A stretch of DNA of 64,000 nucleotides from assembly GCA_002269645.1 (NCBI GenBank), contig NIVC01000471.1:239215-303214 (forward strand). The letters run 5' to 3'. The position numbers and the translations under genes were made by a program. Below are positions 4,576 to 62,138 of this stretch, in pieces (within the stretch, counting starts at the first letter, position 1; each line of letters starts with the position of its first letter). This DNA is from Macrostomum lignano (lineage: Eukaryota). The notes under the pieces are model-generated. The model was not told the DNA's origin and did not search any database. It worked only from the letters and a program-made list of their open reading frames with translations.

Positions 4576-4659
4576 TTTTGAGCTGGTTCTGCCCTGCTGG
4601 GAGGGGCATCGTGGAATTGAAAAAAAGTAAGCTGGGCGTTTTATTCAAATTATTTTCGG

Positions 4660-6250
4660 AGTGTACACGTCAGACAAGAGTGTACATATTAGATAGGATT
4701 GTACATGTTAGATAAGTGTATTTGTTAGATAGGAGTGTACATGTTAGATGGGAGTGTACATGTTAGATAAGAGTGTACATGTTAGATCAAAGTGTACATG
4801 TTAAAGAGTGTACTTGTTAGACAGGAGTGTACATGTTAGATAGGAGTGTACATGTCAGATAGGAGTGTACATGTCAGATAGGAGTGTACATGTTAGATAG
4901 AAGTGTACATTGAGATAAGAGTGTACATGTTAGATAGGAGTGTTCATGTTAGATAAGAGTGCACATGTCAGATTGGACTGTACATGTTAGATAAAGTGTA
5001 CATGTTAGATAGGAGTGTATATGTTAGATAGGAGTGTACATGTTAGATAGGAGTGTACATGTTAGATAGGAGTGTACATGTTAAAGAGTGTACTTGTTAG
5101 ACAGGAGTGTACATGTTAGATAGGAGTGTACATATTAGATAGGAGTGTACATGTTAGATAGGAGTGTACATTGAGATAGGAGTGTACATGTTAGATAGGA
5201 GTGTTCATGTTAGATAAGAGTGTTCATGTTAGATAAGAGTGTACATGTTAGATAAGAGTTTACATGTTAGATAGGAGTGTTCATGTTAGATAGGAGTGTA
5301 CATGTTAGATAGGAGTGTACATTGAGATAGGAGTGTACATTGAGATAGGAGTGTACATGTTAGATAGGAGTGTTCATGTTAGATAAGAGTGCACATGTCA
5401 GATTGGACTGTACATGTTAGATAAAGTGTACATGTTAGATAGGAGTGTACATGTTAGATAGGAGTGTACATGTTAGATAGGAGTGTACATGTTAGATAGG
5501 AGTGTACATGTTAAAGAGTGTACTTGTTAGACAGGAGTGTACATGTTAGATAGGAGTGTTCATGTTAGATAAGAGTGCAAATGTCAGATTGGACTGTACA
5601 TGTTAGATAAAGTGTACATGTTAGATAGGAGTGTACATGTCAGATTGGACTGTACATGTTAGATAAAGTGTACATGTTAGATAAGAGTGTACATGTTAGA
5701 TAGGAGTGTACATATTAGATAGGAGTGTACATGTGAGATAGGAGTGTACATTGAGATAGGAGTGTACATGTTAGATAGGAGTGTTCATGTTAGATAAGAG
5801 TGTTCATGTTAGATAAGAGTGTACATGTTAGATAAGAGTTTACATGTTAGATAGGAGTGTTCATGCTAGATAGGAGTGTACATGTTAGATAGGAGTGTAA
5901 ATGTTAGATAGGAGTGTACATTGAGATAGGAGTGTACATGTTAGATAGGAGTGTATATGTTAGATAGGAGTGTACATGTTAGATAGGAGTGTACATGTTA
6001 GATAGGAGTGTACATGTTAGATAGGAGTGTACATTGAGATAGGAGTGTAAATGTTAGATAGGAGTGTACATGTTAGATAAGAGTGTACATGTTAGATAAG
6101 AGTGCACATGTCAGATTGGACTATACATGTTAGATAAAGTGTACATGATAGATAAGAGTGTGCATGTTAGATATGAGTGTATATGTTAGAGAGGAGTGTA
6201 CATGTTAGATAGGAGTGTACATGTTGGACAAAAGTGTACATGTTAGAAAC
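4660..6250. repeat. 19-bp tandem minisatellite (GATAGGAGTGTACATGTTA)
   Basis: About 1.6 kb of tandem copies with recurring variant blocks. Confidence 0.95.
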
Positions 6251-6725
6251 GATTTTGCATGTTAGACAGAATTTTTGACACATAAGAAACTCCTACGAAG
6301 GTTGTTTTTATATATATTTTTCTTAAGATGCAAATGCTATAATTTTTTAAAACGATGAGAAACCTCATGAGTCATTTTACAATGTCAAAAACATTGCAGT
6401 CGGATATTTTGCCCTGCCGTCCTGTATCGAGGCAAGTCTGTTGACTTTTAGACTCAAATCTGTGCCGAGAGTCGAGAAGGCGTCTCTGCAGCCAAGATTT
6501 TTTATTGCTGTTTCCTCATCTTTCAAGGCTAATTTTAGAATTTTGGAATAATATCCCATATCCTGTCAGGAACCAGCCCGTGGAGGAACGGGTCAGGACA
6601 CGTGTAGGCGGCCACCACCAGATCCATATTTGGCCATCAGATCAAACCAGACCTAGATCGGCAGATCCTTGATGAGGCGATTCTAAATATCCTATCGATT
6701 GCGCATTGCTGGCAAGGAGGTTCTG

Positions 6726-6750
6726 ATTGGCTGGCTGAATGCTCTATAAA
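6726..6750 (+). promoter_or_regulatory. Candidate core promoter of the YWPGMW precursor gene (reverse CCAAT box and TATA box)
   Basis: ATTGG at 6726-6730 and TATAAA at 6745-6750, about 100 nt upstream of the ATG at 6851. Confidence 0.5.
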
Positions 6751-6850
6751 TTATCCCAGTTCCCTCCTGCTGGGAGGAACCGCTGGACTTCGAGTTGCTG
6801 CAACTTTTGAGGCTCTGAGCTGACTGCTGTTTAACTCTACCGCGTCCGGA

Positions 6851-7892
6851 ATGACAACTCTTGGAAAGTAAGCTGGCTTTTATTTTTTACTTTTTCACTT
6901 CGTTTTGCTCAGTTTCACCAGATTCTGCTAACCGATTTTTCACTCGGCTCTCATAAATGAGCGTTTTTGTTCGGACCTGTAGGCCCCATGACCAAGAGAA
7001 ACTGTTTGCGGCATCGCTGCATTAGGGCAGCCATTCAAGAATGCCATTGCGCTGAGTTGCCATGCAGTTTCTGTGTGGTTGCTATGCGGTTTCCATGCAG
7101 TTGCTATGCTGTTGCTATGCGGTTTCCATGCAGTTGCTATGCAGTTGCTGTGCGGTTGCTGTACCGTTACTATTCAGTTGCTATTCAGTTGCTATTCTGT
7201 TGCTATGCGGTTTCCATGCAGTTGCTATGCTGTTGCTATGCGCTTTCCATGGGGTTGCTATGTAGTTGCTATGCTTTTCCCATGCCGATGCTATATGCCA
7301 TTACCATGCAATTTCTACGCGGTTAATATACAGTTACTTTTCAGTTGTAATGCGGTTGCTATGCGGTTTCCATGCTATTTCAAACTTAATCTCGAACGCA
7401 TCGGTTCGCCACTCTACCCTGCTCAGGCCGCAGACAGTCCGCCTGGCCGCTCCGCTGGCTCTGCTCCTGCTGTACACCATCTGCTTTTGCGCCAAACCAA
7501 CGGCCGGTCTGCCAGCTTCCGCCAGCCTGATGGAGCGCCGAGCCAGCTACTGGCCGGGCATGTGGCAGTTCGACCGAAGCGACGGCGGCGGCTACGGGGA
7601 GCGCTACTACGACTACTACGGCGGGGCCAGGTACGCCAAGCGAGGCTACTACTGGCCGGGCATGTGGAACTTCGATCGCTACTACGACGAGAGCTCGCCA
7701 CTGGAGGGCAAGCGCGCCTACTACTGGCCTGGCATGTGGCGCTACCAGCAGCGCCGGCCGTCCAAGCGGTCCTACGGCTACGGCAACGACCATCCGTACT
7801 GGCTGGGCAAAGCCTGCGGCGAGACTGGCGACCCCGCCGCCTGCAGCATCCTGAACGGCCTGCACAACAACTATTATTACTACTATGATTGA
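6851..7892 (+). CDS. Secreted prohormone-like (neuropeptide precursor) protein, 160 aa, with three YWPGMW repeats
   Basis: Exons 6851-6867 (ATGACAACTCTTGGAAA|GTAAGC) and 7427-7892 (CTCAG|G) join in frame: MTTLGKPQTVRLAAPLALLLLYTICFCAKPTAG (signal peptide-like), then RR/KR-flanked peptides ASYWPGMW..., GYYWPGMW... and AYYWPGMW..., and a C-terminal ACGETGDPAAC two-Cys segment. GC-rich coding-like codon usage. Confidence 0.8.
6995..7375. repeat. Degenerate 10-11-bp repeat (GTTGCTATGC) in the intron; same family again at ~8085-8375
   Basis: Direct reading. It produces Cys/Tyr/Ala-rich pseudo-ORFs. Confidence 0.85.
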
Positions 7893-8717
7893 GCAGTTCT
7901 TGCTATCTTGGTTGGTTTCATCTTATAGACAAACCTTTTGGAGGCCGACAAGTTCTATGTATTGTATCGTGTGTCGTTTTCTCCGAATGTCATCAACCCC
8001 ACCAACACTAAACGGTTTTGTGCGTCTCTGAGCTTGGCGTTTCTATTTTAACGGCATGTTGCGGTAACAGCGAACTGTATCTGTACTGTCCCTATGCTGT
8101 TGCTATGCCGTTGCTAGGCTTTTGCCACCTAGATACTATAATTAATGTATTTGTCTTAGAATATTTGCTTTTGTCACTTAGCTATTGCAGCCTGTAGTAG
8201 CAGCACATACTCATACAATTGCTATGCTGTTGCTGTGCAGTTGCTATGCAGTTGCTATGCAGTTTCTAGGCAGTTTCTAGGCAGTTGCTACGCAGTTGTT
8301 TTGCAGTTTCTGTGCAGTTGCTATGCATTTGCTATGCCGTTGCTATGCTATTGCTATGCTGTTGCTATGCAGTCGATATATATCGTTTCTAGTCCATCTC
8401 AGCTGTTATTTTCCCATGTTTCTTTGAAGTCAGTGCGTTATTCCCCTGCAGGTATCGAAGCGATCAGGAAGATCAGGATTGATCAGTGATCAGGAGTGAT
8501 CAGTGATCAGGAAAATTTGATCAGGACAGACTGTTTTGTTAATCCTTAATCCTAACATTCGCGCATATTATCCTATATCCCACCCTGCGAGACTGCACTA
8601 CCCATGTAGACTCCTGTAATAACTGTTGGGTGTCTCATTATTCGGAAAGAAATATATACCACTCCATAAAATTCGAATTGTCAATATCCATTCATTTATT
8701 TATTTATTATAAATTTA

Positions 8718-9655
8718 GAGTGAAGTGTCGGAGATATGAAGTGTCGGAGATGTGAAGTGTCGGAGATATGAAGTGTCGGAGATATGAAGTGTCGGAGATG
8801 TGAAGTATCGGAGATATGAAGTGTCGGAGATGTGAAGTGTCGGAGATGTGAAATGTCGGAGATATGAAGTGTCGGAGATGTGAAGTGTCGGAGATGTGAA
8901 ATGTCGGAGATATGAAGTGTCGGAGATATGAAGTATCGGAGATATGAAGTGTCGGAGATGTGAAATGTCGGAGATATGAAGTGTCGGAGATGTGAAGTGT
9001 CGGAGATATGAAGTGTCGGAGATATGAAGTGTCGGAGATGTGAAGTATCGGAGATATGAAGTGTCGGAGATGTGAAGTGTCGGAGATGTGAAATGTCGGA
9101 GATATGAAGTGTCGGAGATATGAAATGTCGGAGATATGAAGTGTCGGAGATATGAAGTATCGGAGATATGAAGTGTCGGAGATGTGAAATGTCGGAGATA
9201 TGAAGTGTCGGAGATATGAAATGTCGGAGATATGAAGTGTCGGAGATATGAAGTATCGGAGATATGAAGTGTCGGAGATATGAAGTATCGGAGATATGAA
9301 GTGTCGGAGATATGAAGTGTCGGAGATATGAAGTGTCGGAGATGTGAAGTGTCGGAGATATGAAGTGTCGGAGATATGAAGTGTCGGAGATGTGAAGTGT
9401 CGGAGATAAGAAGTGTCGGAGATATGAAGTGTCGGAGATATGAAGTGTCGGAGATATGAAGTGTCGGAGATATGAAGTATCGGAGATATGAAGTGTCGGA
9501 GATGTGAAGTATCGGAGATATGAAGTGTCGGAGATGTGAAGTGTCGGAGATATGAAGTGTCGGAGATGTGAAGTATCGGAGATATGAAGTGTCGGAGATA
9601 TGAAGTGTCGGAGATATGAAGTGTCGGAGATATGAAGTGTCGGAGATGTGAAGTC
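8718..9655. repeat. 16-bp tandem minisatellite (GAAGTGTCGGAGATAT)
   Basis: Direct reading. The 337-aa ORF has a 16-aa period. Confidence 0.96.
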
Positions 9656-10491
9656 GCTTCTCACTTCATATCTTCGATGAGGATAGAAAAGATGAGACCC
9701 AGACTTCAAACCTCAGTATTTTCTCAGCAATTGTGCACTGGCTGTTATGTTTATTCTGTCGTCAAAAAATAAACATTCCACAAAAATAAACCTAAAGACG
9801 CAGTTCAGAGTGAGAGACGCACGCAAACCTTGGTGTTGATAGTCAGTTGTCTATTTTTACTCATGTGGAGGCGGGGGACTGTACCCGATCGGTCGTGTAC
9901 TGATGTTTTTACAGTCGGTCTGAGAATTTTTTGCCTCAAAACAAGCGCTTTTATAAGGCACCACCTGATGTCGTTTGAGACAGCAGAAAAACACAGGAAA
10001 TTCGTTTCAGCTTCTATTCAAAACGATGTTGACGATTTGTTTTTGCACCTGCGACCCAGCACGGGATGAAAGGCAATTATTTTGGAGTAAAAAATACCCC
10101 GGCTATCTCTGGTCCAGAAAAGTCGCACAGAGGTTGCTCAGCAGCCCTGACTTTCTCTCAATGACATGACACACATGATCTTCATCATCATGGATAGTCA
10201 CGAACTCAGCGCTAAACGCCTACGACTGGAACAGTGAGAATCAGAACCCTTGAGCACGGAGGACAGCTGCTAAAACGACTCGAGTACCTCTAATGGCAGA
10301 TGTTTGCAGAAAGGATTATATGCTCCTCTGGAAAGCATTTCCTTACTAATTAAGTCTAGCTGTTTCGATTGAGAGTGCCAGATGGTATTGCAGTGTTTTT
10401 GTATGTTTTTATAGCAGCCACTACGAGTATAAGCTGGCATGTAGTTGCATTGTGAATTTGACTGAATAATTTGGTTAACTTAATACTTAGG

Positions 10492-11166
10492 AGCTACAGA
10501 GGGGTGACAGCTACAGAGGGGTGACAGCTACAGAGGGGTGACAGCTACAGAGGGGTGACAGCTACAGAGGGGTGACAGCTACAGAGGGGTGACAGCTACA
10601 GAGGGGTGACAGCTACAGAGGGGTGACAGCTACAGAGGGGTGACAGCTACAGAGGGGTGACAGCTACAGAGGGGTGACAGCTACAGAGGGGTGACAGCTA
10701 CAGAGGGGTGACAGCTACAGAGGGGTGCCAGCTACAGAGGGGTGACAGCTACAGAGGGGTGACAGCTACAGAGGGGGCGACAGCTACAGAGGGGTGCCAG
10801 CTACAGAGGGGTGACAGCTACAGAGGGGTGACAGCTACAGAGGGGTGACAGCTACAGAGGGGTGCCAGCTACAGAGGGGTGCCAGCTACAGAGGGGGCGC
10901 CAGCTACAGAGGGGTGCCAGCTACAGAGGGGTGACAGCTACAGAGGGGGTGCCAGCTACAGAGGGGGGTGCCAGCAGGGGGGTGCCAGCTACAGAGGGGT
11001 GACAGCTACAGAGGGGTGACAGCTACAGAGGGGTGACAGCTACAGAGGGGTGACAGCTACAGAGGGGTGCCAGCTACAGAGGGGTGACAGCTACAGAGGG
11101 GTGACAGCTACAGAGGGGGCGACAGCTACAGAGGGGGCGCCAGCTATAGAGGGGTGACAGCTACAG
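10492..11166. repeat. 17-bp tandem minisatellite (CTACAGAGGGGTGACAG)
   Basis: Direct reading. Confidence 0.96.
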
Positions 11167-12076: not shown

Positions 12077-15000
12077 ATGACTCAGCAAATTTCACTCGCG
12101 CCACCCGGGCCGTTTACAATCGATAGCGACTGCCACTCCACAGCACAGCGCTGGACTGCATGGACTCGTCGCTTCGCCACGTACATCAATGCAGCTGGAA
12201 TCACCGACAAGACTCGAGGGCAGCAGCTGCTGCTGTACGCCGCAGGAGAGGAGCTGCAGGCTGTAGTCGAAGAGAACGAGATCGCCTCTGGAGAGGACTA
12301 CAGCAGCCTCGCGAAAACCATCCAGACGTTCTGGGACGGGAAGAATAACATTGTGTTCCTGCGTTTCAAGTTTGAGACCTGCAGACAGCAGCCTGGCGAG
12401 CAGATCGACCAGTGGTATCAGCGTCTGCGCAAGGCGGCGGAGCCGTGTGAGTTCGGGACCCTCAGAGACTCGCTGATCCGTGACAAAATCGTCGCCTACT
12501 GCGAATCTGAGAGACTCAGGAGAGACTTCTTGCAGACCAACAATATCTCCCTGGCAGATGTGCTCAAAAAGGCGAGGGCGAAAGAAGCCGCGGAGCAGCA
12601 GGCCACCGCGATGGAGAGCGACAGACCAGGGAACCGCAGCAGCTCGCAGCAGTCAGAAGAGACCAGAAGCCACAGATGCCGCAGACACCAACGCAGCACG
12701 TATCGTGCGATCGCTGCGGCAGGCCAGGGCACCCCACGTGCACCGCAGCGCAGGGCAAGAGCTGCAGAAAGTGCGGGAAGCCGGGCCACTTCGCGCGAGC
12801 CTGCAGGTCCAAGCAGGGCGCCCCGCAGAGCGGCGCCGACGCCGTCGCAACGCTGCAAGGCGAGACCAGCTACCAGAAGGTGGACCACCCGGACTCCGGC
12901 GTGTTCGAGGTCGATCAGGGTGAGCAGTCGGCCCACACAATAGCCGAGATCAACGGCTCCAGACTGTCGGTGTTGATCGACAGCGGTGCGGCTCGAAATG
13001 TGATCAACCGGGCCACGTTCGAGAGTCTGAGACAGCGGCCGCACCTGCAGACCACCTCGGACAGGCTGTTCGCGTACGGGTCGGACAGGCCGATGCAGCT
13101 GCTGGGCAAGGCGGCGATGGACGTCCGCATTTTCGGCCGGCAGGCAGTCGCCACGTTCCACGTCGTCGAAGGGAGAGGCATCACCATCATCGGCAGGCAG
13201 ACGGCCACTCAGATGGACATCCTGCGGGTCGGGCCACCACCGACAGCCGGACAGCAGGTGCTGCAGGTCGCTGAAGCGGAGGCGGCGGTCGATGGCCTTC
13301 TCAGCGGCACGAGATCCAGCGGAGTGCCTCAAGGACACGTCGAGGACATCGGCAGGGTGCTGCGCAAGCACGCCAGCGTGTTTAGCGGAGTCGGCTGCTT
13401 CACCGGGCCGCCTGCCGACATCCACCTCACCGACAGCGCCCGCCCAGTCTGCCATGCGCCTTCGAAGGTGCCGATCCACCTGGCAGACGCGGTGGTCAAG
13501 GAACTGCAGTTGTTAGAGCAGCTCGGGATCATTGAGCCCGTCGACGGCCCGGCGCCGTGGGTCGCGCAGATGGTCGTTGTGCCCAAGAAGGAGCCGGGCG
13601 AGGTGCGCATCACGCAGGACCTCCGCGATGTCAACCGCTTTGTCATCCGCGAGCGACACCAGATTCCGACTTTCGAGGAGGTGACCGGGGACATGGCTGG
13701 CAGCACTGTGTTCTCAGAGCTGGACATCGCGAAGGCGTTCTACCAGGTGCCTGTCGCCGAGAAATGCCGCAACCTGCTAACATTCTCGACGCCTCGCGGG
13801 CTTCGCCGTCTCACCCGGCTGTGCATGGGCCTGTCCACCTCCCAGGAGATCCTGCAGAATGTGATGAGTCGAGTGCTGGCAGGCCTGCCCAACGTCAAAT
13901 GGATCCACGACGACGTGGTCGTGTTCGGCCGCACGATGGCGGAGCACAACAGCAGCCTCGAGGCATGTCTGGCCCGCCTGGCGCAGCACGGCATCACGCT
14001 GAACGCTCGGAAATGCCGACTGGCGCGCAGCAGCATCGAGTTCATGGGAATGCGGCTCACGGCGGAAGGGGTCCAGGCCACGGAGAGCAAGGTCGCCGCC
14101 GTTCAAGACTTCAAGGAGCCCGAGTCGATTGGGCAGCTTCGCTCATTCCTGGGCCTCGTGAACTACCTCGCCGTGTTCACGCCACAGCTGGCCAAGGTGG
14201 CGGAGCCGCTGCGGCGCCTGACCAGGAAGACCGTCGACTGGCAGTGGGGCGCCGACCAGGCCAGCGCCTTTGAGCAGCTGAAGCGCAGCATCGCGGAGCC
14301 GACAACGCTGGCTTTTTACGACAAGCGGCTACACACGCAGCTGATTGTGGACGCGGGGCCGACCGGACTGGGCGCCATCCTGGCGCAGGTGCAGCGCGAC
14401 GGCAGCTCAAGGCCAGTCGCATACGCCAGCCGGACCCTGTCCGATGTCGAGCGGCGATATTCGCAGACCGAGAAAGAGGCACTCGCCGTGAAGTTCGGCT
14501 GCCTGAAGTTTGAGTACTACCTGCATGGATCGCCCCAGTTCACAGTGGTCTCTGATCACAAGCCGCTGACGGCCATGTTCGCGCCTGGGTCGCGGCCGCC
14601 TCCACGAGTCGAGCGAATGGCGCTGAGGATCCAGCACCTAGTGTTCAAGGTCGAGTATCAGCCGGGAGCCTCCAATGCTGCAGATGTACTCAGCAGGCAG
14701 CCCCTAAGCGAGCACGACGGAAGTTTTGGCGAGCAGCGGAGGGAGGCCTACATCAACGAGGTGGCGCAGGCGGCTGTGCCGATGGCGCTGACACTCCAAG
14801 ACATCCGCAAGAGCTCTGCCAGCGACCCAGTCATCCGGGCGGCGATAGCGGCGACGCAAGGCGGTCGGTGGGATTGCTCCAACCCCGAGATGCGCTCGCT
14901 CCACGCGCTGCGAGAGGAGCTGTCTGCGGTTGACGGGGTCCTCCTTCGACACCACCGAATCGTCGTGCCAGCTGATCTGCGGCAGCAGATGCTCGAATTA

Positions 15001-16079
15001 GCGCATCAAGGGCACCAGTGCTCGCAGAAGACGATCGCCAGACTCTGCACGAAGGTCTGGTGGCCGAGGATGGCAACTCAAGCGGAGGAATTCGTCAGTC
15101 GATGCCGCAGCTGCGCCGTCACGTCGCACACGCCAGCCGTCCGGGCCACGCCTCTGCAGCCGACGCCGATCCCGCGGGCGCCTGGCTGTCGATCGGCGCC
15201 GATTTCGTGGGACCCATCAACAACAACATGCTGCTGGTGTGCGTGGACCGCTACTCAAGGTTTCCGGAGGTGCAGCTCATGCAGACGACGACGGCCGAGG
15301 CATTGATTCCCCGCCTGCGAGAGATGTTCGCCCGTTTCGGGATCCCACAGGAGCTCGTGACAGATAATGGACCACCTTTCTCGTCCAAGGAGTTCGGCCG
15401 GTTCCTGGCGAGCTACGGGATCAAGCACCGCCTCATCACGCCCTACTACCCAGCGGCCAACGGCATGACAGAGCGACTGAACCGCTCCATCAACAAAGTC
15501 GTGCGAGCAGCCATCGAGGAGCGGCGGGACTGGAGGGCCGCTCTGGACGAGTGGCTGCTGGCCTACAGGAACACGCCGCACACGGCCACCGGGCGCGCAC
15601 CAGCCGAGCTGCTGATGGGCCGGCGGCCAAACGACATAATCCCCGCCGCCCGGCCGTCCCAGCGAGTCCGCATCAACGAGCAGCGGCTGAGAGAAGCCGA
15701 CGCTGGCGCCAAGGCGGCGATGAAGCAGCACGCGGACGCAAAAAGGCGACCACGGCGGCACGACGTCCAGGTCGGCGACTCGGTGCTACGACGGCGGGTC
15801 GGTGCCAGCAAGACGCAGACGCCATTCGAGAGCGGTGCCTGGACAGTCCAGCGGGTGGCCGGCAACTCGCTGCTGCTACGCCGGGACGGCACGACCTGCT
15901 GGCGGCACTGCACGGCGGTCAAAGTCGTCAGCCCCGACTTGGCCGACGCCGGCGCCCAGACGCAGACCGCTGCACCGAGAGCTTCGGGCGAGGCGGCCCG
16001 AGATCCACCCGCCTCCCCCGTGGCGCTGCGCCCGCACCCCCGCGCTGCTCGGGCGGGCGTGAAAATCTACAAGGACTGA
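12077..16079 (+). CDS. gag-pol polyprotein read across two -1 frame breaks (~12625-12640 and ~15170-15185)
   Basis: Gag N-terminus in ORF 12077. Zinc knuckle CRKCGKPGHFARAC, protease LIDSGA, RT ELDIAKAFYQ / IHDD, RNase H VDAGPTGLGA / YSQTEKEALA and integrase HH-CC are in ORF 12676. The integrase core (ADFVGP, TDNGPPF, NGMTERLN) is in ORF 15018. Confidence 0.93.
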
Positions 16080-16304
16080 ATTTGAAATCCTGCAATGACT
16101 GAAATTAACTGACTTTCTTTTCCGTAATATGCGGACTGAAGTTTTTTTACGTTTTTGCTGCATTCGATTCAAATATTTTATTTCCTTAATATTTTAATCT
16201 CCATTTTCAATGCGCATCATCGGTGAATCTTTCGAACTTTGTATTTTCGAGTTACGTTTAAATTGATTTTCTTCTCTCTCAGTCTCTATTCGAAAGGGGA
16301 GAGA

Positions 16305-17209: not shown

Positions 17210-19601
17210 TCACCAGAAGTGACACTTGTCATTATCAGTCAGGTACATGGGGTCTCCCGGCTGGCATTTGAACACCCTGGCGAAGTCCTTCGACTGCATC
17301 ACCTGACCGTTCACTCTGGGATGCGGAGGCGAGTGACGCTTATCTTTGAATACAGAGATCAGGGTGTTCTTTTCCGCCTTTGTGCAGAGCAGCTGAGCAT
17401 TGTGGATGAAGAACAGCTGATCCGGTGTCAGCCCCGCCAGCTTCTCTCCTGGAATCAGCCGGGGCCGCCTCCCAGACTTTGCCGAACTGCTTCTGTAAGC
17501 TCGGAAGGCAGAATTGATGCCAACAATATCGGCAAAATTTTCGTTAAACTTCCGCACTCCTGCATTCATTGAATTGTCCCAAATGTCGGATTTTGCAAAC
17601 TCAGGATCGATGATCTGGTTGTAGAAATCTGCCAGACATTGAGATTGCTTGTCATACCGCAGCGCTGTGAGATTGTCAAATACACCTATCTGTTCCTCTC
17701 CAACGCTAATTTTTTTATTGCCTAATTTGTCAAAGGCGTGCCCGACCTCGTGGCCGACTGTGCCGCCGATGCCTCCGTACAGCAGGCAGTCGGGGTAGCC
17801 CTTCATGTAGACTTTGGTGAGCAGCAGGCCCAGGTAGATGAAGAGCGAATTCAGGTGTAGCGAGTAATGAGCGTTGACAGTAAAAATTCTTGAAAAAATG
17901 TCACTTGGCATCAAGTCCTGTTTGTCAGCTGTCAAAATCCAAAGTCGATTCTGAAGCTGAGTGCTTTTAAACTGCAAAACAACATCGCCAAATGTTCTGC
18001 TTTGGTTAACTTGAGCAGCAACTTTTGAGTAGCCTTCGGTGAACTCGGAAATGTTGAACTGGGGGTAGCCGACGGTGCTCCGAATGGCGTCGAGCTTCTT
18101 CTTAATTGCTGCCTTACTCGGCTGCTCAATCCACGCCTCGCTGTCCACATTCTCCCACATGGCCTCCTTGATGTCGCCGACTACCGCTTTCACTGAGTTG
18201 AAGTCATCTGTGACGAAGGCGCTGCTGAACATCTGCAAAGCCACTGGCGGCATGGAGCCCAACATCATGTCCATGCACAGTCTTGAGCTGTTCCGGCTTT
18301 CTTTCTCATGAATGAGATACTTTTGTTGCCCGAAAAGGTTTTTAAAGAATTTAAACGATTCGTCTGGAAGAAAATTGACTGCCGACAATGCAGAGTCCAT
18401 GCGAATAAAGTCGTAGTACGGTCCCTGTCTGTGCTCCAGCTCCGTTGTGAGCTGCTCGAGTACAAAAAATAATAGCGGGTACCTAATAATCTTGACTCTC
18501 ATTGAGGGAGGTAACTTATTGGCTGAATACTTATTCACAGCGCTGTAAAACTCCGTCCAGTTAAAGTTGAGATTATCTGCCTCAACCTGAGTAAAATTCT
18601 GCAGCTGTTCCAGAGAGTAAGGACCAACTTTCAAATACGATTCGCCTTTGTTTAACATTTGCTGAACTGCAGGCTTCATCTGATTTATACTAACAGTCAA
18701 ATTCAGGTCTATGAGATCACTGAAATCTTCTAATGCAGAAATTCCGTCATTGAAAACATGATTCCAGGATTTCAGGGTAGATAGGTAGTATGGTGACGAG
18801 TGCAATCTCAGACTCCGCTCCGCCGAGCCTGGCGACAATCTGAACAGATCCGATGTACCGGTTATTACCAGTCTCGCTAGGAAGTCTTCGATGCCTGAGT
18901 AGCCCTCTAGAAAGTCCAACAAAGGTCTCACTAATGATTTCATGTCGAAAGGTCGTTCTCCAGTCTGCCAGCTGTTCGGGAGAAATTCCTCTTTCTTAGA
19001 ATTCAGAACGCTGGAGCCGCGCCAATCCATGCAGGTCCCGTAGATGGATCGCAGAGTCTGGAACAGCTGCGCTTCGCTTGCGTCTCTGGGCTTGGACAAG
19101 TTCTTGAAGTACATCATCTCAAATAGATTTCCTTGAATGGAGTTGTCCTCCTGTAGTACTGAGCCCACGGTCTCGGCGGTGAAGGGGTGGGTTTTATGGA
19201 AACCGCCGCAGGCGAAGCTGTAGAAGTCTTGGCATGGGTCCGCAGATCGGTCGATGTGGCTCTGCAGCAGTGCGCTTGCACTTATGCAGGCCTCGCTGGT
19301 GCACAGGCTGGGATGCTTGGGAGTGGCTGCTCCAGGTGGTAACCGAGCTGTGCTGAGAGCGTAGAGCAGAACGAAAACTAGAAGCAGAATTGACAGAACC
19401 GCAATCAGCAAGAGCATCAGCAGGCGTCTTGCTCGATCAAGTCGAGTTGAAAACTCAACTCTGCCGCCATCGAGAATGCTCTGTTGAAAATTCAGCAATT
19501 TGAGGGTAGGGTTAATCCAGTTTGACTGTCTGACAGATGGAATTTCCCAATGAAAATGTTCTTACCATTGAAGTTGCCGCACTGCTACCAGCAGACATCA
19601 T
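17210..19601 (-). CDS. Neprilysin / endothelin-converting-enzyme-like M13 zinc metallopeptidase, ~768 aa, type II membrane protein
   Basis: Exons 19601-19566 (MMSAGSSAATSM|GTAAG) and 19480-17210 (TTTTCAACAG|), phase 0, 85-nt intron. N-terminal TM anchor, CTSEAC..DPCQDFYSFACG, VNAHY, HEVGH (HExxH), ENFAD, HSP and a C-terminal C..W are all M13 hallmarks. Confidence 0.95.
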
Positions 19602-27169: not shown

Positions 27170-28532
27170 GATCTTGTCAGTGTCACACAGGGTCAATTCT
27201 TAGTGTCACACTGGGATCTTGTCATGTCACACTGGGATCTTGTCATGTCACACTGGGATCTTGTTAGTGTCACACTGGGAACTTGTCATGTCACACTGGG
27301 ATCTTGTCATGTCACACTGGGATCTTGTTAGGGTCACACTGGGTCATTAGTGTCACACTGGGTCATTAGTGTCACACAGGGTCAATTCTTAGTGTCACAC
27401 TGGGAACTTGTCAGTGTCACACTGGGTCATTAGTGTCACACTGGGTCATTAGTGTCACACTGGGTCATTAGTGTCACACTGGGTCATTAGTGTCACACTG
27501 GGTCATTAGTGTCACACTGGGTCATTAGTGTCACACTGGGTCATTAGTGTCACACTGGGTCATTAGTGTCACACTGGGTCATTAGTGTCACACTGGGTCA
27601 TTAGTGTCACACTGGGTCATTAGTGTCACACTGGGTCATTAGTGTCACACTGGGTCATTAGTGTCACACTGGGTCATTAGTGTCACACTGGGTCATTAGT
27701 GTCACACTGGGTCATTAGTGTCACACTGGGTCATTAGTGTCACACTGGGTCATTAGTGTCACACTGGGTCATTAGTGTCACACTGGGTCATTAGTGTCAC
27801 ACTGGGTCATTAGTGTCACACTGGGTCATTAGTGTCACACTGGGTCATTAGTGTCACACTGGGTCATTAGTGTCACACTGGGTCATTAGTGTCACACTGG
27901 GTCATTAGTGTCACACTGGGTCATTAGTGTCACACTGGGTCATTAGTGTCACACTGGGTCATTAGTGTCACACTGGGTCATTAGTGTCACACTGGGTCAT
28001 TAGTGTCACACTGGGTCATTAGTGTCACACTGGGTCATTAGTGTCACACTGGGTCATTAGTGTCACACTGGGTCATTAGTGTCACACTGGGTCATTAGTG
28101 TCACACTGGGTCATTAGTGTCACACTGGGTCATTAGTGTCACACTGGGTCATTAGTGTCACACTGGGTCATTAGTGTCACACTGGGTCATTAGTGTCACA
28201 CTGGGATCTTGTCAGTGTCACACTGGGATCTTGTCACTGCCTCACTGGGATCTTATCAGTGTCACACTGGGATCTTGTCAGTGTCACACTGGGATCTTGT
28301 CAGTGTCACACTGGGATCTTGTCAGTGTCACACTGGGATCTTGTCAGTGTCACACTGGGATCTTGTCACTGCCTCACTGGGATCTTGTCAGTGCCTCACT
28401 GGGATCTTGTCAGTGTCACACTGGGATCTTGTCAGTGTCACACTGGGATCTTGTCAGTGTCACACTGGGATCTTGTCACTGCCTCACTGGGATCTTGTCA
28501 GTGCCTCACTGGGATCTTGTCAGTGTCACACT
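27170..28532. repeat. Compound minisatellite: 22-bp (GTGTCACACTGGGATCTTGTCA) flanks around a homogeneous 19-bp core (GTGTCACACTGGGTCATTA)
   Basis: The 19-mer array at about 27420-28200 is near perfect. 22-mers lie on both sides. Confidence 0.95.
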
Positions 28533-30210: not shown

Positions 30211-30462
30211 GGAATTTTCATTCCAGTGAGCTGAGGTGGGCCTGTGTGATTTCTCACATTCCAAAGTGATCCGCCGTCAGGAAATCCGATATGCTGCTGA
30301 GGCCTCGATTATTTTTGGTCTCGACTAACCAAAGCAGATTTTGGGACAGCGAGTCGATGGACTGAGCTATATCATAGGACGGAATGACCTGAGAATGGTG
30401 TAAACACATCCTGCTGTTGCTGCCTCTGTAGCATATTGATAGGAGGAAGTGCTTTGTCTAGT

Positions 30463-32113
30463 TGAGTCACTGGATGATGGAGTAACTGAATGATTGAGTC
30501 ACTAAAAGATTGAATCACTATATGATTAGGTAACTGAATTATTGAGTCTCTAGATGATTGAGTCACTGAATGATTAAGTCACTGAATGATTGAGTCACTG
30601 AATGATTGAGTCACTGAATAATTGAGTCACTGAATGATTGAGTCACTGAATGATTAAGTCACTGAATGATTGAGTCACTTCATTATTGAGTCACTGAATG
30701 ATTGAGTCACTTCATGATTGAGTCACTGAATGATTAAGTCACTGAAGGATTGATTCACTGAATGATTGATTCACTGAATGATTGAGTCACTGAATGATTG
30801 AGTCACTGAATGATTGAGTCACTGAATGATTGGAATGATTGAGTCACTGAATGATTGATTCACTGAATGATTAAGTCACTGAATAATTGAGTCACTGAAT
30901 GATTGAGTCACTGAATGATTAAGTCACTGAATGATTGAGTCACTTCATTATTGAGTCACTGAATGATTGAGTCACTTCATGATTGAGTCACTGAATGATT
31001 AAGTCACTGAAGGATTGATTCACTGAATGATTGAGTCACTAAAAGATTGAATCACTATATGATTAGGTAACTGAATTATTGAGTCTCTAGATGATTGAGT
31101 CACTGAATGATTAAGTCACTGAATGATTGAGTCACTGAATGATTGAGTCACTGAATAATTGAGTCACTGAATGATTGAGTCACTGAATGATTAAGTCACT
31201 GAATGATTGAGTCACTTCATTATTGAGTCACTGAATGATTGAGTCACTTCATGATTGAGTCACTGAATGATTAAGTCACTGAAGGATTGATTCACTGAAT
31301 GATTGATTCACTGAATGATTGAGTCACTGAATGATTGAGTCACTGAATGATTGAGTCACTGAATGATTGGAATGATTGAGTCACTGAATGATTGGAATGA
31401 TTGAGTCACTGAATGATTGATTCACTGAATGATTAAGTCACTGATTGATTAAGTCACTTAATGATTAAGTCACTGAATGATTGATTCACTGAATGATTGA
31501 TTCACTGAATGATTGAGTCACTGAATGATTGATTCACTGAATGATTGAGTCACTGAATGATTGAGTCACTGAATGATTGAGTCACTGAATGATTGATTCA
31601 CTGAATGATTGAGTCACTGAATGATTAATTCACTGAATGATTGATTCACTGAATGATTGAGTCACTGAATGATTGATTCACTGAATGATTGATTCACTGA
31701 ATGATTGAGTCACTGAATGATTGATTCACTGAATGATTGAGTCACTGAATGATTGAGTCACTGAATGATTGATTCACTGAATGATTGATTCACTGAATGA
31801 TTGAGTCACTGAATGATTAATTCACTGAATGATTGATTCACTGAATGATTGAGTCACTGAATGATTGAGTCACTGAATGATTGAGTCACTGAATGATTGA
31901 GTCACTGAATGATTGAGTCACTGAATGATTGATTCACTATATGATTAGGTAACTGAATGATTGATTCATTGATTGATTGAGTCACTGAATGATTGATTCA
32001 CTGAATGATTAATTCACTGAATGATTGAGTCACTGAATGATTGATTCACTGAATGATTGAGTCTCTAGATAATTGAGTCACTAAATGATTGAGTCACTGA
32101 ATGATTGAGTCAC
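30463..32113. repeat. 16-bp minisatellite (GAGTCACTGAATGATT)
   Basis: Direct reading, with an internal block duplication (about 30480-31020 repeated at about 31020-31400). Confidence 0.95.
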
Positions 32114-34428: not shown

Positions 34429-37400
34429 TCAAATGTCCATCTTTTTCATTCGCTCCATCAGCAACTCTACAGCCCGGTCATTCTCCTCCTTGGACAGAAC
34501 CGGCTGCCTCTCGCCGCGACCCCCTTGGTAGCTCTGTGGGATGGGAGCGAATCTTGCTGTTTCTACTTTTTCCCTATGGAAATGAAATGGGAACTTGAAA
34601 ACAAATCAAAGAATAGTGTACAAGTCAGCAAGAAGCAGTGCTGCGAGAAGACGTGGCTTTTAAATTTCTTGCTTGAACAATAGTGGTATATTAGCTTTGG
34701 CTGGTGAACTTTTTTTGACAGAAAGCTTTGCAATTTTAGAACACAGACATGAGGTTCTAGGATGGCTATTAGTGATTCAAGATAACTCAGACTGAGATAC
34801 AGATATTTACTCATGCAGCGACAATGCTCTCAGGTGATGTGATCGTGAGTAGCCCTTTTATCTGAAACAGAGTTAAGAAAAAGTACATAATATCGCTTAA
34901 AACATGTTTTGGTTTGAGGCAGATGGCCTCTATTTTTAAAGACAAGACGCACATGTACTTTTAAAAGGACTTGTCGAGAATAAGATCGAATACTTGAAAT
35001 CAAATTTTAATTTCTAGGATAGAGTAGCGGCACATCAAAGAATCTTAGATAGTAGCGGCACATCAAAGAATCTTAGATAGTAGCGGCACATCAAAGAATC
35101 TTAGATAGTAGCGGCACATCAAAGAACCTTAGATAGAAGCGGCACATCAAAGAATCTAGGATAGTAGCGGCACATCAAAGAACCTAGGATAGTAGCGGCA
35201 AATCAAAGAACCTAGGATAGTAGCGGCACATCAAAGAACCTAGGATAGTAGCGGCACATCAAAGAATCTAGGATAGTAGCGGCAAATCAAAGAACCTAGG
35301 ATAGTAGCGGCACATCAAAGAACCTAGGATAGTAGCGGCACATCAAATAATCTAGGATAGTAGCGGCAAATCAAAGAATCTAGGAAAGTAGCGGCACATC
35401 AAAGAATCTAGGATAGTAGCGGCACATCAAAGAATTTATCAAACTCACCACGCTGAAGGGCCTCGGGTTGAGACTCCGGGCGCTGGAACGAGCGCTGCTC
35501 ATCCGTGACAAGGAGTGCTGGCCGTGCGCCTGTAGAATTCAGTTCGCACTTAATCATAAATCATAATTACTGCGGAAAAATTTCGTAAAAAAATATTGAT
35601 AATTCCGTATTGCTCCTACCTCGGAATCCCATTCAAGATCCTCTTCATTCTCGCATTGGTTGAGAGCGGCCAGGTATTCTAAATGCGATAAATTAACGCA
35701 TAATTTAGTAACAAATTGTTTCAGAAAAGTTCATCAGTTCAAGGACAACACTCGACACTAATGGATCGAGAGTCCCTGTAGCTATGCAAGTTCTACGATC
35801 AACCATCCGTCTTTTCGAGCCTTTTCGAGTAGCTCTCTTAATATCCCAGCTTACGCCCAGTTCGAGACTTGACTCACAAAACTCGTTAAAAGACAGGTTT
35901 TACCTTTCTAGAACTGGGGTGTTGGATTCATGGGTTGCTGTGCCGCACCAGAGAGTCCCTCTTGCACGCACGCGACAGTGATGATATCAATCAAGATTAA
36001 CTCAGACTGAATAAATTGACATTTTACCCCCCAAATAGAGCAATATGAAGTCCCTAATTCTCTTTTTCTACCTAATTCTAGTTCTCGATTAAATTCCATA
36101 TCATAATCCCCAGTCTCACCCTTGCGCTTCTTGGGGTTGATGATGCGAAAGATGCGAATCAGGCTGGCGCTGTCCTCCAGACCCGCGCCCCCGAAGATGT
36201 AGCACATGTGCCGGTGTATCCAGGCACCGTGGTGGATAAGGTTCTCCGGCTGCCCACCAGACGCTGGCAGAGCCGACGGCACCTTCCAAGTCCGCTTGTA
36301 GAGGCTGAACTTCATCAGCGGCTCCTGGACCGGGCCGCCATCCGGGAACACGCAGTCGTTGTAACCCCCGAATAGGAACAGGTCCTTGGACTGGTGCGCG
36401 GTGAGGCTGTGCCCGGCTCGCGGCATCGGCAGCAGGTGACCTTCGACTGGGACGCGCGACCACTGCAGGGTGGCTGCAGAAATCGGGAAAATATTCTGAA
36501 TTGGCTACTGTAAGTAGAGGCCATTTGAACTTCAGCGCTTTCGATGCTTTATGAAGATTCAACTGACTGGAAAATATGGTATTTAGTTCAGCTGGAATCC
36601 ATGCTAATCATGCTTGGGCGCAACCTAGGGATTCACCCGGCCGTTTCTATTGGCAACACACACATGTAAGTCGCTATTGGACGGAATAGTAGTCACGTGA
36701 CTGCTCTCAGCCAATAGCGACTTACATGTGTGTGTTGCCAATAGAAACGGCCGAGTGATTCCCAAGGTTGCGCATGTGTGATGCTAATGATGCTGGAATC
36801 CATGCTAATGAAGCTGAAATCCATGCTAATGAAGCTGGAATCCATGCTAATGAAGCTGGAATCCGCAATTTTGAACGTGCGAGGTCCATAGCTCAACCGT
36901 CAAGACCAGTTGACAAATACACATACATGCATCATCTCTGTGAGTCCCTGGCTATGAAACTATTCATCCACGTTTTCCTTGTCTTTGAGTACCGGGGCCA
37001 CTCACCAGTGTCCAGCTGGTGCAAGTCGTTGTAAAAGCAGCCCTGACCTCCGGTGCCTCCGAACACGTACAGGCTCTGTCCCACCGCAGCGGCCGCGTGT
37101 TCGCATCTGGGCGACGGCGGCGCGCCGCTGACCGTTGCCCGGTGCCAGTGCTGCGCCATGATGTCGTACACAAACGTCGTATTGCTAAGGACGCCGTTGC
37201 TATGGCCGCCGAATACAACAAGCTGCGATTCGATCATGTTGCTGGTGTTGTACACCTGCTCGGGCTCCTCTCCGCTGGCCTTGACGTGGGTCCACTTGCG
37301 CACCACTGCAGAGTTTATTTGCAGATTTTTGGGCTTTTCAACTTCGAAATGAAAAATTTAAGGATATCAACTCGGCTTTTACTACCTTAGGGGCGTCGAT

Positions 37401-61860: not shown

Positions 61861-62138
61861 ATCAGTTCCTAATTCAAACAGAATTATATATAATAAATGA
61901 ACAATAATGAATAACAGTCAATGAAATGCAGTCAAATTCCGTTTTATTAAAGCAGTTCTTTACAAATCAACATTCATTTCTTCATAATTAAGACTTAGTT
62001 GAGTTTGAACTTTCCGAGCTAGAGAGAAAATGTAAACATACACACGGCGGTTAAAGCAATACCGCTCTTGGATATCCTATTAGCTCAACGTATTTAGCCT
62101 AAGGCGAACTCAAATATCAGAGTGCAGCATGTAATCAT

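What the first reader, a model, noticed from the sequence alone, without database searches (positions are those of the whole stretch)
6851..7892. Unfamiliar prohormone-like precursor with a triplicated N-terminal YWPGMW motif
Seen: a signal peptide, then three segments that each start right after RR/KR with x-[SY]-YWPGMW, Tyr/Gly-rich extensions, one G-KR amidation signal (SPLEG-KR) and a final CGETGDPAAC loop with a poly-Tyr end. Established: most neuropeptide families conserve the C-terminal amidated end, and MIP/allatostatin-B is W-x6-Wamide, which this is not. I do not recognise the motif. Inference: this is a new peptide family with N-terminal conservation. An alternative is a Tyr-rich structural, adhesive or seminal secreted protein.
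Basis: partly seen in the sequence, partly recalled or inferred. Interest (0 to 1): 0.8.

Follow-up and report, generated by a model that had tools for sequence, protein, structure and literature searches.

The report
Flatworm secreted multi-copy YWPGMW peptide precursor
This is a real, spliced and evolutionarily constrained gene of the flatworm Macrostomum lignano, so far annotated only as a hypothetical protein; it encodes a small secreted precursor built like a neuropeptide prohormone and belongs to a small peptide family that I could not find described in the literature I could search, though where it is expressed and whether it is cut into peptides remain untested.

Summary
ATG 6851, exon 1 6851-6867, a GT..AG intron 6868-7426 and exon 2 7427-7892 give a 160-aa protein with three dibasic-flanked x-[SY]-YWPGMW units and a C-terminal CGETGDPAAC loop.

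The window is Macrostomum lignano contig NIVC01000471.1. The product is 100% identical to GenBank 'hypothetical protein BOX15_Mlig013514g1', a model from an RNA-seq-only annotation.

- **Constraint within the genome:** three genomic copies differ in the CDS only at four synonymous third-codon positions. In the most diverged copy, the intron and upstream region differ by about 4.4%.
- **Relatives:** an ortholog from another species (4 units, same Cys loop), an M. lignano paralog with at least 5 units (four complete and identical, KR-GYYWPGMWNFRNAD-KR), and two divergent genes from an unidentified eukaryote.
- **What is conserved:** the dibasic site plus the N-terminal core x-Y-[YF]-W-P-G, and in Macrostomum the block YWLGKACGETGD. 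Spacers, unit length, Gly-KR amidation sites and tyrosine richness are not conserved.
- **Known families:** no Pfam, PDB or literature match.

Best reading: a prohormone-type precursor of a new, lineage-restricted peptide family. Neuronal expression and processing are inferred, not shown. Interest is moderate.

The parts
6726..6730 (+). Inverted CCAAT box (ATTGG) of the putative core promoter
   Evidence: Read directly. Retained in all three genomic copies, although the upstream region of copy L126 is 4.2% diverged. Promoter function is inferred.
6745..6751 (+). TATAAAT, a putative TATA box 100 nt upstream of the ATG
   Evidence: Read directly. Identical in all three genomic copies. Function is inferred.
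6851..6867 (+). Exon 1 coding part: MTTLG plus the first two bases of Lys6
   Evidence: It is the start of the GenBank gene BOX15_Mlig013514g1.
6868..7426 (+). Intron of 559 nt (GTAAGC ... CTCAG), phase 2
   Evidence: Splice sites are conserved in the three copies. Intron length is 559, 559 and 405 nt, and the intron of L126 is 4.5% diverged against 0.6% for exon 2.
7055..7368 (+). 11-bp satellite (AGTTGCTATGC, about 28 copies) inside the intron
   Evidence: Tandem Repeats Finder. The same satellite recurs 3' of the gene at 8219-8373. In the alignment with copy L126 the intron has 162 gap columns, and that intron is 154 nt shorter.
7427..7892 (+). Exon 2: the rest of the CDS (aa 6-160) and the TGA stop
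   Evidence: GC3 is 83% for the spliced CDS. Without the splice, the first in-frame ATG after the hydrophobic core (Met41) lies past it, and the nearest in-frame ATG upstream lies in the intron.
7428..7508 (+). Remainder of the signal peptide (PQTVRLAAPLALLLLYTICFCAKPTAG); candidate cleavage after Cys27 or Gly33
   Evidence: Hydropathy and the (-3,-1) rule. The ortholog, the paralog and P0005 also have a single N-terminal hydrophobic core.
7509..7541 (+). Short propeptide LPASASLME followed by the first dibasic site, RR (7536-7541)
   Evidence: The E-R-R-A-S-Y-W-P-G-M-W junction is identical in the ortholog L001.
7542..7643 (+). Unit 1: ASYWPGMWQFDRSDGGGYGERYYDYYGGARYA, then KR
   Evidence: The core is conserved; the Gly/Tyr-rich extension is absent from the ortholog.
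7644..7715 (+). Unit 2: GYYWPGMWNFDRYYDESSPLE-G, then KR. This is the only Gly-KR site; the predicted product is ...SSPLE-amide.
   Evidence: The first 10 residues, GYYWPGMWNF, are identical to the repeated peptide of paralog P0003.
7716..7769 (+). Unit 3: AYYWPGMWRYQQ, then RR-PS-KR. The RR is followed by Pro, so the peptide may instead end at ...RRPS.
   Evidence: The remark about Pro at P1' rests on general knowledge of prohormone convertase specificity.
7770..7889 (+). C-terminal 40-mer SYGYGNDHPYWLGKACGETGDPAACSILNGLHNNYYYYYD with the Cys136-Cys145 loop (7815-7844)
   Evidence: YWLGKACGETGD, ACS and LNG are invariant between M. lignano and L001 despite synonymous codon changes; the poly-Tyr tail is not conserved. 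The disulfide is inferred.

Best explanation
The locus is a two-exon Macrostomum lignano gene (GenBank BOX15_Mlig013514g1) encoding a 160-aa secretory precursor of the prohormone type.

Proposed mechanism:
1. The N-terminal signal peptide directs the protein into the secretory pathway.
2. Subtilisin-like prohormone convertases cut at the five dibasic sites (RR44, KR78, KR102, RR116 and/or KR120). M. lignano has a PC2 homolog expressed in the nervous system.
3. A carboxypeptidase trims the basic residues.
4. The products would be three related peptides that share a free N-terminal core [AG]-[SY]-Y-W-P-G-M-W-x-[FY], one of them possibly amidated (…SSPLE-NH2), plus a 40-residue C-terminal peptide with a Cys136-Cys145 loop.

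The conserved N-terminal core, not the C-terminus, would be the part recognised by a still unknown receptor.

Shown here: the gene model, purifying selection, the family and its pattern of conservation.
Inferred: signal-peptide cleavage, convertase processing, the disulfide, signalling function and neuronal or endocrine expression.
For: - Identity and transcript. The product is 100% identical to GenBank/UniProt M. lignano proteins PAA81773.1, PAA82422.1 and PAA89280.1, and the annotated span equals 6851-7892. The NIVC00000000 annotation was built only from RNA-seq transcript assemblies plus TransDecoder (PMC5730564), so a spliced transcript underlies the model.
- Constraint within the genome. 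Three genomic copies have 4 variable CDS sites, all third-position and synonymous, with no amino-acid change. In copy L126 the intron and upstream region are 4.2-4.5% diverged. The TATA box, the inverted CCAAT box and the splice sites are retained.
- Constraint between species. Against ortholog L001, 69 residues are identical, and 26 of the 58 with degenerate codons differ synonymously. The identities cluster in ERR-ASYWPGMW, KRGY[YF]WPGMW, KRA..WPGMWR and YWLGKACGETGD..ACS.LNG. The spacers cannot be aligned.
- Family architecture. Unit numbers are 3 (here), 4 (L001), at least 5 in paralog P0003 (four complete and identical, GYYWPGMWNFRNAD), 7 in P0005, and 3 each in the L003 upstream ORF and P0006. 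All 25 listed units follow a [KR][KR] pair. Two further, more divergent units in L003 begin KE-AFYWPS and RR-AFYIPL. Unit length ranges from 7 to 32 aa.
- Secretion. All four full-length or 5'-complete members tested have one N-terminal hydrophobic core, and none has a comparably hydrophobic segment elsewhere.
- No domain or fold. Pfam gives nothing above cutoff and PDB gives nothing. The AlphaFold2 single-sequence model has mean pLDDT 47.5.
- Processing machinery. An M. lignano PC2 homolog with nervous-system in situ signal exists (PMC4490696).
Against: - There is no direct evidence of processing or of the expressing cell type. No peptidomics, in situ or tissue RNA-seq data could be consulted.
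- Most neuropeptide families are conserved at an amidated C-terminus; here only one unit has a Gly-KR site, and its position is not conserved in the ortholog.
- Units 1 and 2 are long (32 and 21 aa) and carry Tyr/Gly-rich tails that look more like low-complexity material than hormone sequence.
- The family is detectable only in Macrostomum and one unidentified eukaryote, among 1.8 billion representative proteins. No support comes from characterised peptides of planarians or schistosomes.
- The paralog's automatic UniProt name, 'Salivary secreted protein', hints that an annotator linked it to gland products. The basis for that name is unknown.
- The signal peptide was judged by hydropathy only.
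Confidence: 0.62

Rival explanations
1. It is an exocrine or gland peptide precursor rather than a neuro-endocrine one. The secretory processing is the same, but the products are released to the outside or into a mating partner: seminal-fluid or prostate peptide, pheromone, antimicrobial or defensive peptide, or mucus or rhabdite component.
For: - The architecture (signal peptide, dibasic-flanked repeats) does not distinguish neuronal from glandular peptide precursors.
- The family is lineage-restricted and its spacers and copy number change fast. From general knowledge, this is also typical of reproductive and defensive secretions.
- The paralog is named 'Salivary secreted protein' in UniProt.
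Against: - The 8-10-residue core is strictly conserved over a divergence large enough to change 45% of synonymous codons. That fits a receptor-ligand constraint better than rapidly evolving reproductive proteins.
- No expression data support either reading.
Confidence: 0.22
2. It is a Tyr/Gly-rich structural protein (eggshell precursor, adhesive or cuticle-like matrix) that stays intact and is cross-linked through tyrosine or DOPA. On this reading the dibasic residues are incidental parts of a structural repeat.
For: - The M. lignano protein is 14.4% Tyr and 11.9% Gly, with GGGYGERYYDYYGG and a YYYYY tail.
- From general knowledge, flatworm eggshell precursors are Tyr-rich repeat proteins.
Against: - Tyr richness is not conserved: 6.0% in ortholog L001, where Y is replaced by F in the core (YFWPGMW, TFWPGMW) and both the GYG spacer and the poly-Tyr tail are missing.
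- What is conserved is KR plus the core and the Cys-loop block.
- The paralog consists of perfectly repeated 14-mers, each bounded by KR on both sides.
- The protein is very small (about 130 aa mature), with acidic spacers typical of prohormones.
Confidence: 0.1
3. It is not a functional gene: a chance ORF or mis-annotated repeat in a satellite-rich, GC-rich stretch.
For: - The window is packed with minisatellites that generate long spurious ORFs, for example 8696-9709 on the minus strand.
- The GC-rich exon also carries a 159-aa antisense ORF.
Against: - All differences among the three genomic copies are synonymous, while the intron and flanks diverge about 4.4%.
- An ortholog, a paralog and distant homologs exist with the same frame-specific motif, and the three 5'-complete ones have signal peptides.
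- The gene model comes from an RNA-seq-based annotation.
Confidence: 0.02

Closest known systems
Generic multi-copy invertebrate neuropeptide precursors (for example the flatworm npp/spp prohormones of Schmidtea and Schistosoma)
   Same: Signal peptide; several related short units bounded by KR/RR; acidic or variable spacers; copy number differs between paralogs and species; no globular domain. A PC2 homolog is present in the organism.
   Different: No sequence relationship to any of them. None was recovered in the search of 1.8 billion representative proteins. No YWP/FWP/WPG/YYW string occurs in the Collins 2010 text or supplements or in two schistosome neuropeptide papers. Conservation here is at the N-terminus, and amidation is largely absent.
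Orcokinin / pedal-peptide type precursors
   Same: From general knowledge: multi-copy, non-amidated peptides of about 12-16 aa whose N-terminal part is the conserved one. This is the closest analogue for how the precursor would work.
   Different: The core sequence x-Y-Y-W-P-G-M-W bears no resemblance to NFDEIDR- or PFDSIS-type cores. No profile hit was found. The 'NFDR' following the core in unit 2 is not in register with the orcokinin N-terminus.
MIP / allatostatin-B / WWamide (W-x6-W-amide)
   Same: Trp-containing repeated peptides on a multi-copy precursor.
   Different: Spacing here is W-x3-W. The second Trp is followed by 4 to more than 20 further residues, not by Gly plus a dibasic site, so no C-terminal Trp-amide can form.
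APGWamide / RGWamide precursors of spiralians
   Same: Multiple peptide copies in the N-terminal part and two Cys residues near the C-terminus of the precursor (described in bioRxiv 10.1101/2021.03.03.433790). A P-G-x-W element is present.
   Different: Those peptides end in GW-amide (xGW-G-KR), and their Cys pair is 20-30 residues apart. Here there is no GW-G-KR, and the Cys residues are separated by 8 residues.
Flatworm Tyr-rich eggshell or vitelline precursor proteins
   Same: Secreted, with high Tyr and Gly content in the M. lignano copy.
   Different: Tyr richness is not conserved in the ortholog. The conserved blocks are dibasic-flanked cores and a Cys loop. There is no sequence similarity to any annotated protein.

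Membership tests
Prohormone-type multi-copy secreted peptide precursor (class, not a homology family) | N-terminal signal peptide and no other membrane segment | tested here: met
   One hydrophobic core at aa 16-26 (Kyte-Doolittle 2.6), basic n-region, and (-3,-1) cleavage candidates after aa 27 or 33. The maximum hydropathy elsewhere is 0.79. The ortholog, the paralog and P0005 show the same pattern. This is heuristic only; SignalP was not available.
Prohormone-type multi-copy secreted peptide precursor (class, not a homology family) | Repeated related peptide units bounded by dibasic convertase sites | tested here: met
   3 of 3 units here follow RR or KR, as do all 25 units listed across the six sequences. 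Two further divergent units in L003 begin KE-AFYWPS and RR-AFYIPL.
Prohormone-type multi-copy secreted peptide precursor (class, not a homology family) | Between species, conservation is concentrated in the peptide units while the spacers diverge freely | tested here: met
   In M. lignano versus L001, the identities fall in the cores and the Cys-loop block. 26 of 58 conserved degenerate codons are synonymously changed. Spacers differ in length and sequence.
Prohormone-type multi-copy secreted peptide precursor (class, not a homology family) | Processed peptides are actually produced; expression in neurons or endocrine cells | not testable with these tools
   No peptidomic, in situ or tissue-resolved expression data were reachable. 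Only the presence of a neuronal PC2 homolog in M. lignano is documented (PMC4490696).
MIP / allatostatin-B (W-x6-W-amide) | Two Trp residues six residues apart, the second one C-terminal and amidated (W-G-[KR][KR]) | tested here: not met
   The core is W-P-G-M-W (W-x3-W), and no unit has Gly plus a dibasic site after the second Trp.
APGWamide / RGWamide | Units ending in GW-amide; C-terminal Cys pair 20-30 residues apart | tested here: not met
   No GW-G-[KR][KR] is present, and the Cys residues are 8 residues apart.
Orcokinin / pedal peptide | Conserved N-terminal core of the NFDEIDR or PFDSIS type | tested here: not met
   The core is x-Y-[YF]-W-P-G-M-W. There was no hit to any Pfam model or to annotated proteins. 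The family consensus is taken from general knowledge.
Tyr-rich eggshell or structural proteins of flatworms | High Tyr (and Gly) content conserved among orthologs | tested here: not met
   Tyr is 14.4% here and 6.0% in ortholog L001. The poly-Tyr tail and the GYG-rich spacer are absent there.
Tyr-rich eggshell or structural proteins of flatworms | Expression in shell-forming or gland cells; the protein stays intact and is cross-linked | not testable with these tools
   No expression or proteomic data were available.

The most novel reading that the evidence does not exclude
The gene is the founding member of a flatworm (macrostomorph-centred) signalling-peptide family that I did not find described in the searchable literature. 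Its pharmacophore would be the free N-terminus x-Y-Y-W-P-G-M-W created by dibasic cleavage, not an amidated C-terminus. It would act through a still orphan receptor. M. lignano would carry two precursor types: this one, with three divergent units plus a Cys-loop peptide, and a paralog with at least 5 units, four complete and identical (GYYWPGMWNFRNAD).
Probability: 0.45. Interest if true: 0.55.

Novelty: new member of a known kind. Interest (0 to 1): 0.45.

Why it matters
Macrostomum lignano is a transgenic model for regeneration, stem cells and reproduction. I found very few papers on its peptide signalling, although knock-down of its PC2 homolog is lethal during post-embryonic development (PMC4490696). 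A lineage-specific, N-terminally conserved and mostly non-amidated peptide family would be missed by the usual amidation-motif mining. It would add a ligand for de-orphanising flatworm-specific GPCRs. It would also give a compact TATA-containing promoter candidate (about 150 nt upstream of the ATG) for cell-type-specific transgenes. If the product instead turns out to come from a gland, it becomes a candidate reproductive or defensive peptide. Either outcome is useful to flatworm specialists but changes no general principle.

Tried and rejected
- **Pfam and PDB.** Pfam on the window protein, its relatives and the isolated C-terminal 40-mer gave only sub-threshold noise. A PDB sequence search gave nothing.
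- **Structure prediction.** AlphaFold2 on the single sequence gave mean pLDDT 47.5, too poor for a fold search, so none was run.
- **JGI metagenome contigs.** A protein-guided scan gave 85 pattern hits, none confirmed. An exact DNA pattern scan gave only single chance matches on unrelated contigs.
- **Repeat-unit profile.** A profile of three concatenated units returned no hit, not even the known members, so that search was uninformative.
- **Locating the paralog.** Paralog P0003 could not be placed on a contig.
- **Literature.** The strings WPGMW, YYWPG, YFWPG, AYYWP, GYYWP, YWPGM and FWPGM, the gene and protein identifiers, the Collins 2010 planarian prohormone text and supplements, the spiralian neuropeptidome preprint and two schistosome neuropeptide papers gave no relevant match. 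Koziol 2016 and McVeigh 2009 are not held in the library. No M. lignano cell atlas was found.
- **Rejected by inspection.**
  - AKH/RPCH-like: these need an N-terminal pGlu, a single copy and W-amide.
  - Luqin-like: these have one RF/RWamide unit and a C-x10-C tail.
  - Monobasic cleavage at the conserved Arg that follows the core: there is no basic residue at P4, P6 or P8, and unit 2 has an aromatic P1' residue, so the Arg is more likely part of the peptide.
  - The antisense 159-aa ORF 7386-7865 and the overlapping +2-frame ORF 7073-7888: no homologs, and explained by the high GC3 of the coding frame.
- **Neighbouring M13 peptidase.** I found no evidence that it is functionally linked; it is simply carried along in the duplicated blocks.
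Full report
**1. The observation**

- An ATG at 6851 opens a 17-nt coding exon (6851-6867).
- A GTAAGC donor at 6868 and a pyrimidine-rich ...CCCTGCTCAG acceptor ending at 7426 bound a 559-nt intron.
- Exon 2 (7427-7892) completes a 483-nt CDS ending in TGA.

The 160-aa product is:
MTTLGKPQTVRLAAPLALLLLYTICFCAKPTAGLPASASLME-RR-ASYWPGMWQFDRSDGGGYGERYYDYYGGARYA-KR-GYYWPGMWNFDRYYDESSPLEG-KR-AYYWPGMWRYQQ-RR-PS-KR-SYGYGNDHPYWLGKACGETGDPAACSILNGLHNNYYYYYD.

The triplication is not chance.
- The degenerate DNA pattern for YWPGMW occurs three times in the window and never in 100 shuffles.
- Only 26 of 20,000 shuffles of the protein contain any 6-mer even twice.

The splice is needed for a sensible protein. 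The first in-frame ATG after the hydrophobic core is Met41, which lies past it. The nearest in-frame ATG upstream lies in the intron and would add a long non-hydrophobic leader.

**2. Where the window comes from, and whether the gene is real**

The protein is 100% identical to 'hypothetical protein BOX15_Mlig013514g1 [Macrostomum lignano]'. The same sequence is recorded under PAA81773.1, PAA82422.1 and PAA89280.1.

The window is identical to part of contig NIVC01000471.1 of assembly GCA_002269645.1. The GenBank gene span corresponds exactly to window 6851-7892.

That annotation was produced only from RNA-seq transcript assemblies (StringTie/TACO plus a de novo transcriptome, with ORFs from TransDecoder; PMC5730564). 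The annotated junction therefore implies a spliced transcript. I could not inspect the reads myself.

The same paper explains the three genomic copies: the sequenced DV1 line has extensive blocks duplicated at 95% identity or more. Comparing the three copies gives a clean test of constraint:
- In the most diverged copy (L126), the 600 nt upstream and the intron differ by 4.2% and 4.5%.
- Exon 2 of that copy differs by 0.6%.
- All four variable CDS sites among the three copies are synonymous third-codon positions.

The TATAAAT at 6745-6751, an inverted CCAAT box at 6726-6730 and both splice sites are retained in all copies. Intron length varies (559, 559 and 405 nt), and the intron carries an 11-bp satellite at 7055-7368.

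**3. Relatives**

A word-indexed search of 5.8 billion proteins, and then a full HMMER search of 1.84 billion representative proteins, returned very few relatives.

- **P0002 / L001.** This is a 926-nt Logan contig from SRR30276804, GC 63%. Its complete ORF has a signal peptide, ERR-ASYWPGMWHFNR..., three further units (GYFWPGMW twice, ATFWPGMW once) and the tail ...YWLGKACGETGDLYACSVLNGIFDY. It is clearly an ortholog from another, probably macrostomid, species.
- **P0003.** This is UniProt A0A1I8HFB1, also from M. lignano, automatically named 'Salivary secreted protein'. It is a paralog with a signal peptide followed by at least five units, four of them complete and identical (KR-GYYWPGMWNFRNAD-KR). 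It is truncated by the end of the gene model.
- **P0005 and P0006.** These lie on two contigs of ENA metagenome assembly ERZ25070786 (L002 and L003), GC 36-40%, from an unidentified eukaryote. They carry 7 and 3 listed units of the type KR-AYYW[PR]G[VI]K.... An ORF just upstream of P0006 in L003 (9498-9950) holds further units.
- **P0004.** This is an unrelated repeat protein and was disregarded.

Nothing was found in the JGI metagenome contigs.

**4. What is conserved**

Lining up 22 representative units shows a near-invariant dibasic pair followed by [AGS]-[YFST]-[YFN]-W-[PR]-G. Within Macrostomum this extends to -M-W-x-[FYH]-x(0,1)-R.

Everything after that varies:
- Unit length ranges from 7 to 32 residues.
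- The single Gly-KR amidation signal sits on unit 2 in M. lignano but on unit 1 in the ortholog.
- The spacers cannot be aligned.

Between M. lignano and L001, 69 aligned residues are identical. Of the 58 encoded by degenerate codons, 26 use a different codon. The conserved blocks are therefore maintained by selection on the amino-acid sequence, not by recency.

The second conserved block is YWLGKACGETGD..ACS.LNG around the two cysteines.

Tyrosine richness is not conserved: 14.4% here against 6.0% in the ortholog. The ortholog lacks both the GGGYGERYYDYYGG spacer and the YYYYY tail, and replaces core Tyr with Phe.

All four 5'-complete members tested have one N-terminal hydrophobic core, and none has a comparably hydrophobic segment elsewhere.

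No Pfam domain, no PDB relative and no confident predicted fold exist; mean pLDDT is 47.5.

**5. How it most likely works**

The anatomy is that of a prohormone-type precursor:
1. Co-translational entry into the ER.
2. Signal-peptide removal, with candidates after Cys27 or Gly33.
3. Convertase cleavage at RR44, KR78, KR102 and KR120. RR116 is followed by Pro and may be spared.
4. Carboxypeptidase trimming.
5. Amidation of unit 2 only.
6. A Cys136-Cys145 disulfide in the C-terminal 40-mer.

M. lignano has a PC2 homolog with nervous-system expression whose knock-down is lethal (PMC4490696).

The only constant features of the units are the cleavage site and the residues immediately after it. I therefore infer that the free N-terminal core is the functional epitope.

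The Arg that follows the core is probably part of the peptide rather than a monobasic cleavage site. It has no basic residue at P4, P6 or P8, and in unit 2 the P1' residue is aromatic. This rests on general knowledge of convertase rules.

Shown: the gene, the constraint, the family and the conservation pattern. Inferred: every processing step, the signalling role and the cell type.

**6. Rivals**

- **Gland or exocrine peptide precursor** (seminal, defensive, pheromonal). It cannot be separated from a neuronal one by sequence and keeps about 0.2 probability.
- **Intact Tyr-rich structural or eggshell protein.** It is disfavoured because Tyr richness is not conserved while the KR-plus-core element is.
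- **Spurious ORF.** It is excluded.

**7. Comparison with known families**

- In how it would work, the closest analogues are non-amidated, N-terminally conserved multi-copy peptides such as orcokinin and pedal peptide. There is no sequence relationship.
- It fails the defining features of MIP/allatostatin-B: spacing is W-x3-W rather than W-x6-W, and there is no C-terminal Trp-amide.
- It fails those of APGW/RGWamide precursors: there is no GW-G-KR, and the Cys pair is 8 residues apart rather than 20-30.
- The motif strings and gene identifiers are absent from the searchable literature, including the planarian prohormone catalogue and its supplements.
A prior description there cannot be fully excluded. 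However, no homolog from Schmidtea, Schistosoma or cestodes surfaced in the protein searches.

**8. Verdict**

- It is a new family (new member) of a well-known kind of gene. The gene is already present in databases as an uncharacterised protein.
- Interest is moderate (0.45). It is valuable for flatworm neurobiology and GPCR de-orphanisation. It is not surprising in principle, since lineage-specific peptide precursors are common.
- The decisive experiments are junction and tissue RNA-seq mapping, in situ hybridisation with PC2 co-labelling, and peptidomics.

Noticed in passing
window 17210-19498 (-): An intact single-ORF M13 (neprilysin/ECE-like) zinc peptidase of about 762 aa. It has an N-terminal membrane anchor, an HEVGH motif at aa 583 and an ENFAD motif. 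It lies about 9.3 kb downstream of the precursor gene on the opposite strand, and the same neighbour is present in paralogous locus L126. From general knowledge, enzymes of this family degrade neuropeptides. I found no evidence of a functional link.
   Followed up: partly
window 12077-16102 (+): A GC-rich (62-66%) Ty3/gypsy-type LTR retrotransposon pol region, with zf-CCHC, RVT_1, RNase H, integrase H2C2 and rve domains, split over overlapping ORFs.
   Followed up: partly
window 7055-7368 and 8219-8373: The same 11-bp satellite (AGTTGCTATGC) fills the intron of the gene and recurs in its 3' flank. The intron of genomic copy L126 is 154 nt shorter.
   Followed up: partly
whole window, e.g. 4658-6266, 8721-9654, 27200-28469, 30462-32113, 60117-61870: The window is crowded with minisatellite arrays of 10-47-bp units (31 Tandem Repeats Finder rows with score of at least 300). 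They create long spurious ORFs, for example 8696-9709 (-), 337 aa of repeated SPTLHISDTSYLRHF.
   Followed up: no
window 50000-50752 (+) and 35908-36426 (-): ORF fragments with a 2OG-Fe(II) oxygenase (AlkB-like) domain and with Kelch repeats. They are probably exons of other genes.
   Followed up: no
P0003 (UniProt A0A1I8HFB1, M. lignano); not in this window: A paralogous precursor with at least 5 units, four complete and identical (KR-GYYWPGMWNFRNAD-KR), named 'Salivary secreted protein' by an automatic source. Its model is truncated at both ends, and no contig could be retrieved for it.
   Followed up: partly
L003 9498-10660 and L002 8752-9690 (ENA ERZ25070786): Two divergent family members from one unidentified, AT-rich eukaryote in a long-read metagenome. 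In L003 the units are split over two adjacent ORFs (9498-9950 and 9983-10660), which points to an intron, a frameshift or a pseudogene. These members have no Cys-loop tail.
   Followed up: partly
L001 100-150: The putative 5' UTR of the ortholog contains a tandem duplication: cgaactccctggcaaccgcag occurs twice and then a third, variant copy runs into the ATG.
   Followed up: no
window 7893-8700: There is no canonical AATAAA or ATTAAA signal within 800 nt downstream of the stop codon. The 3' end of the transcript is therefore undefined from sequence alone.
   Followed up: no
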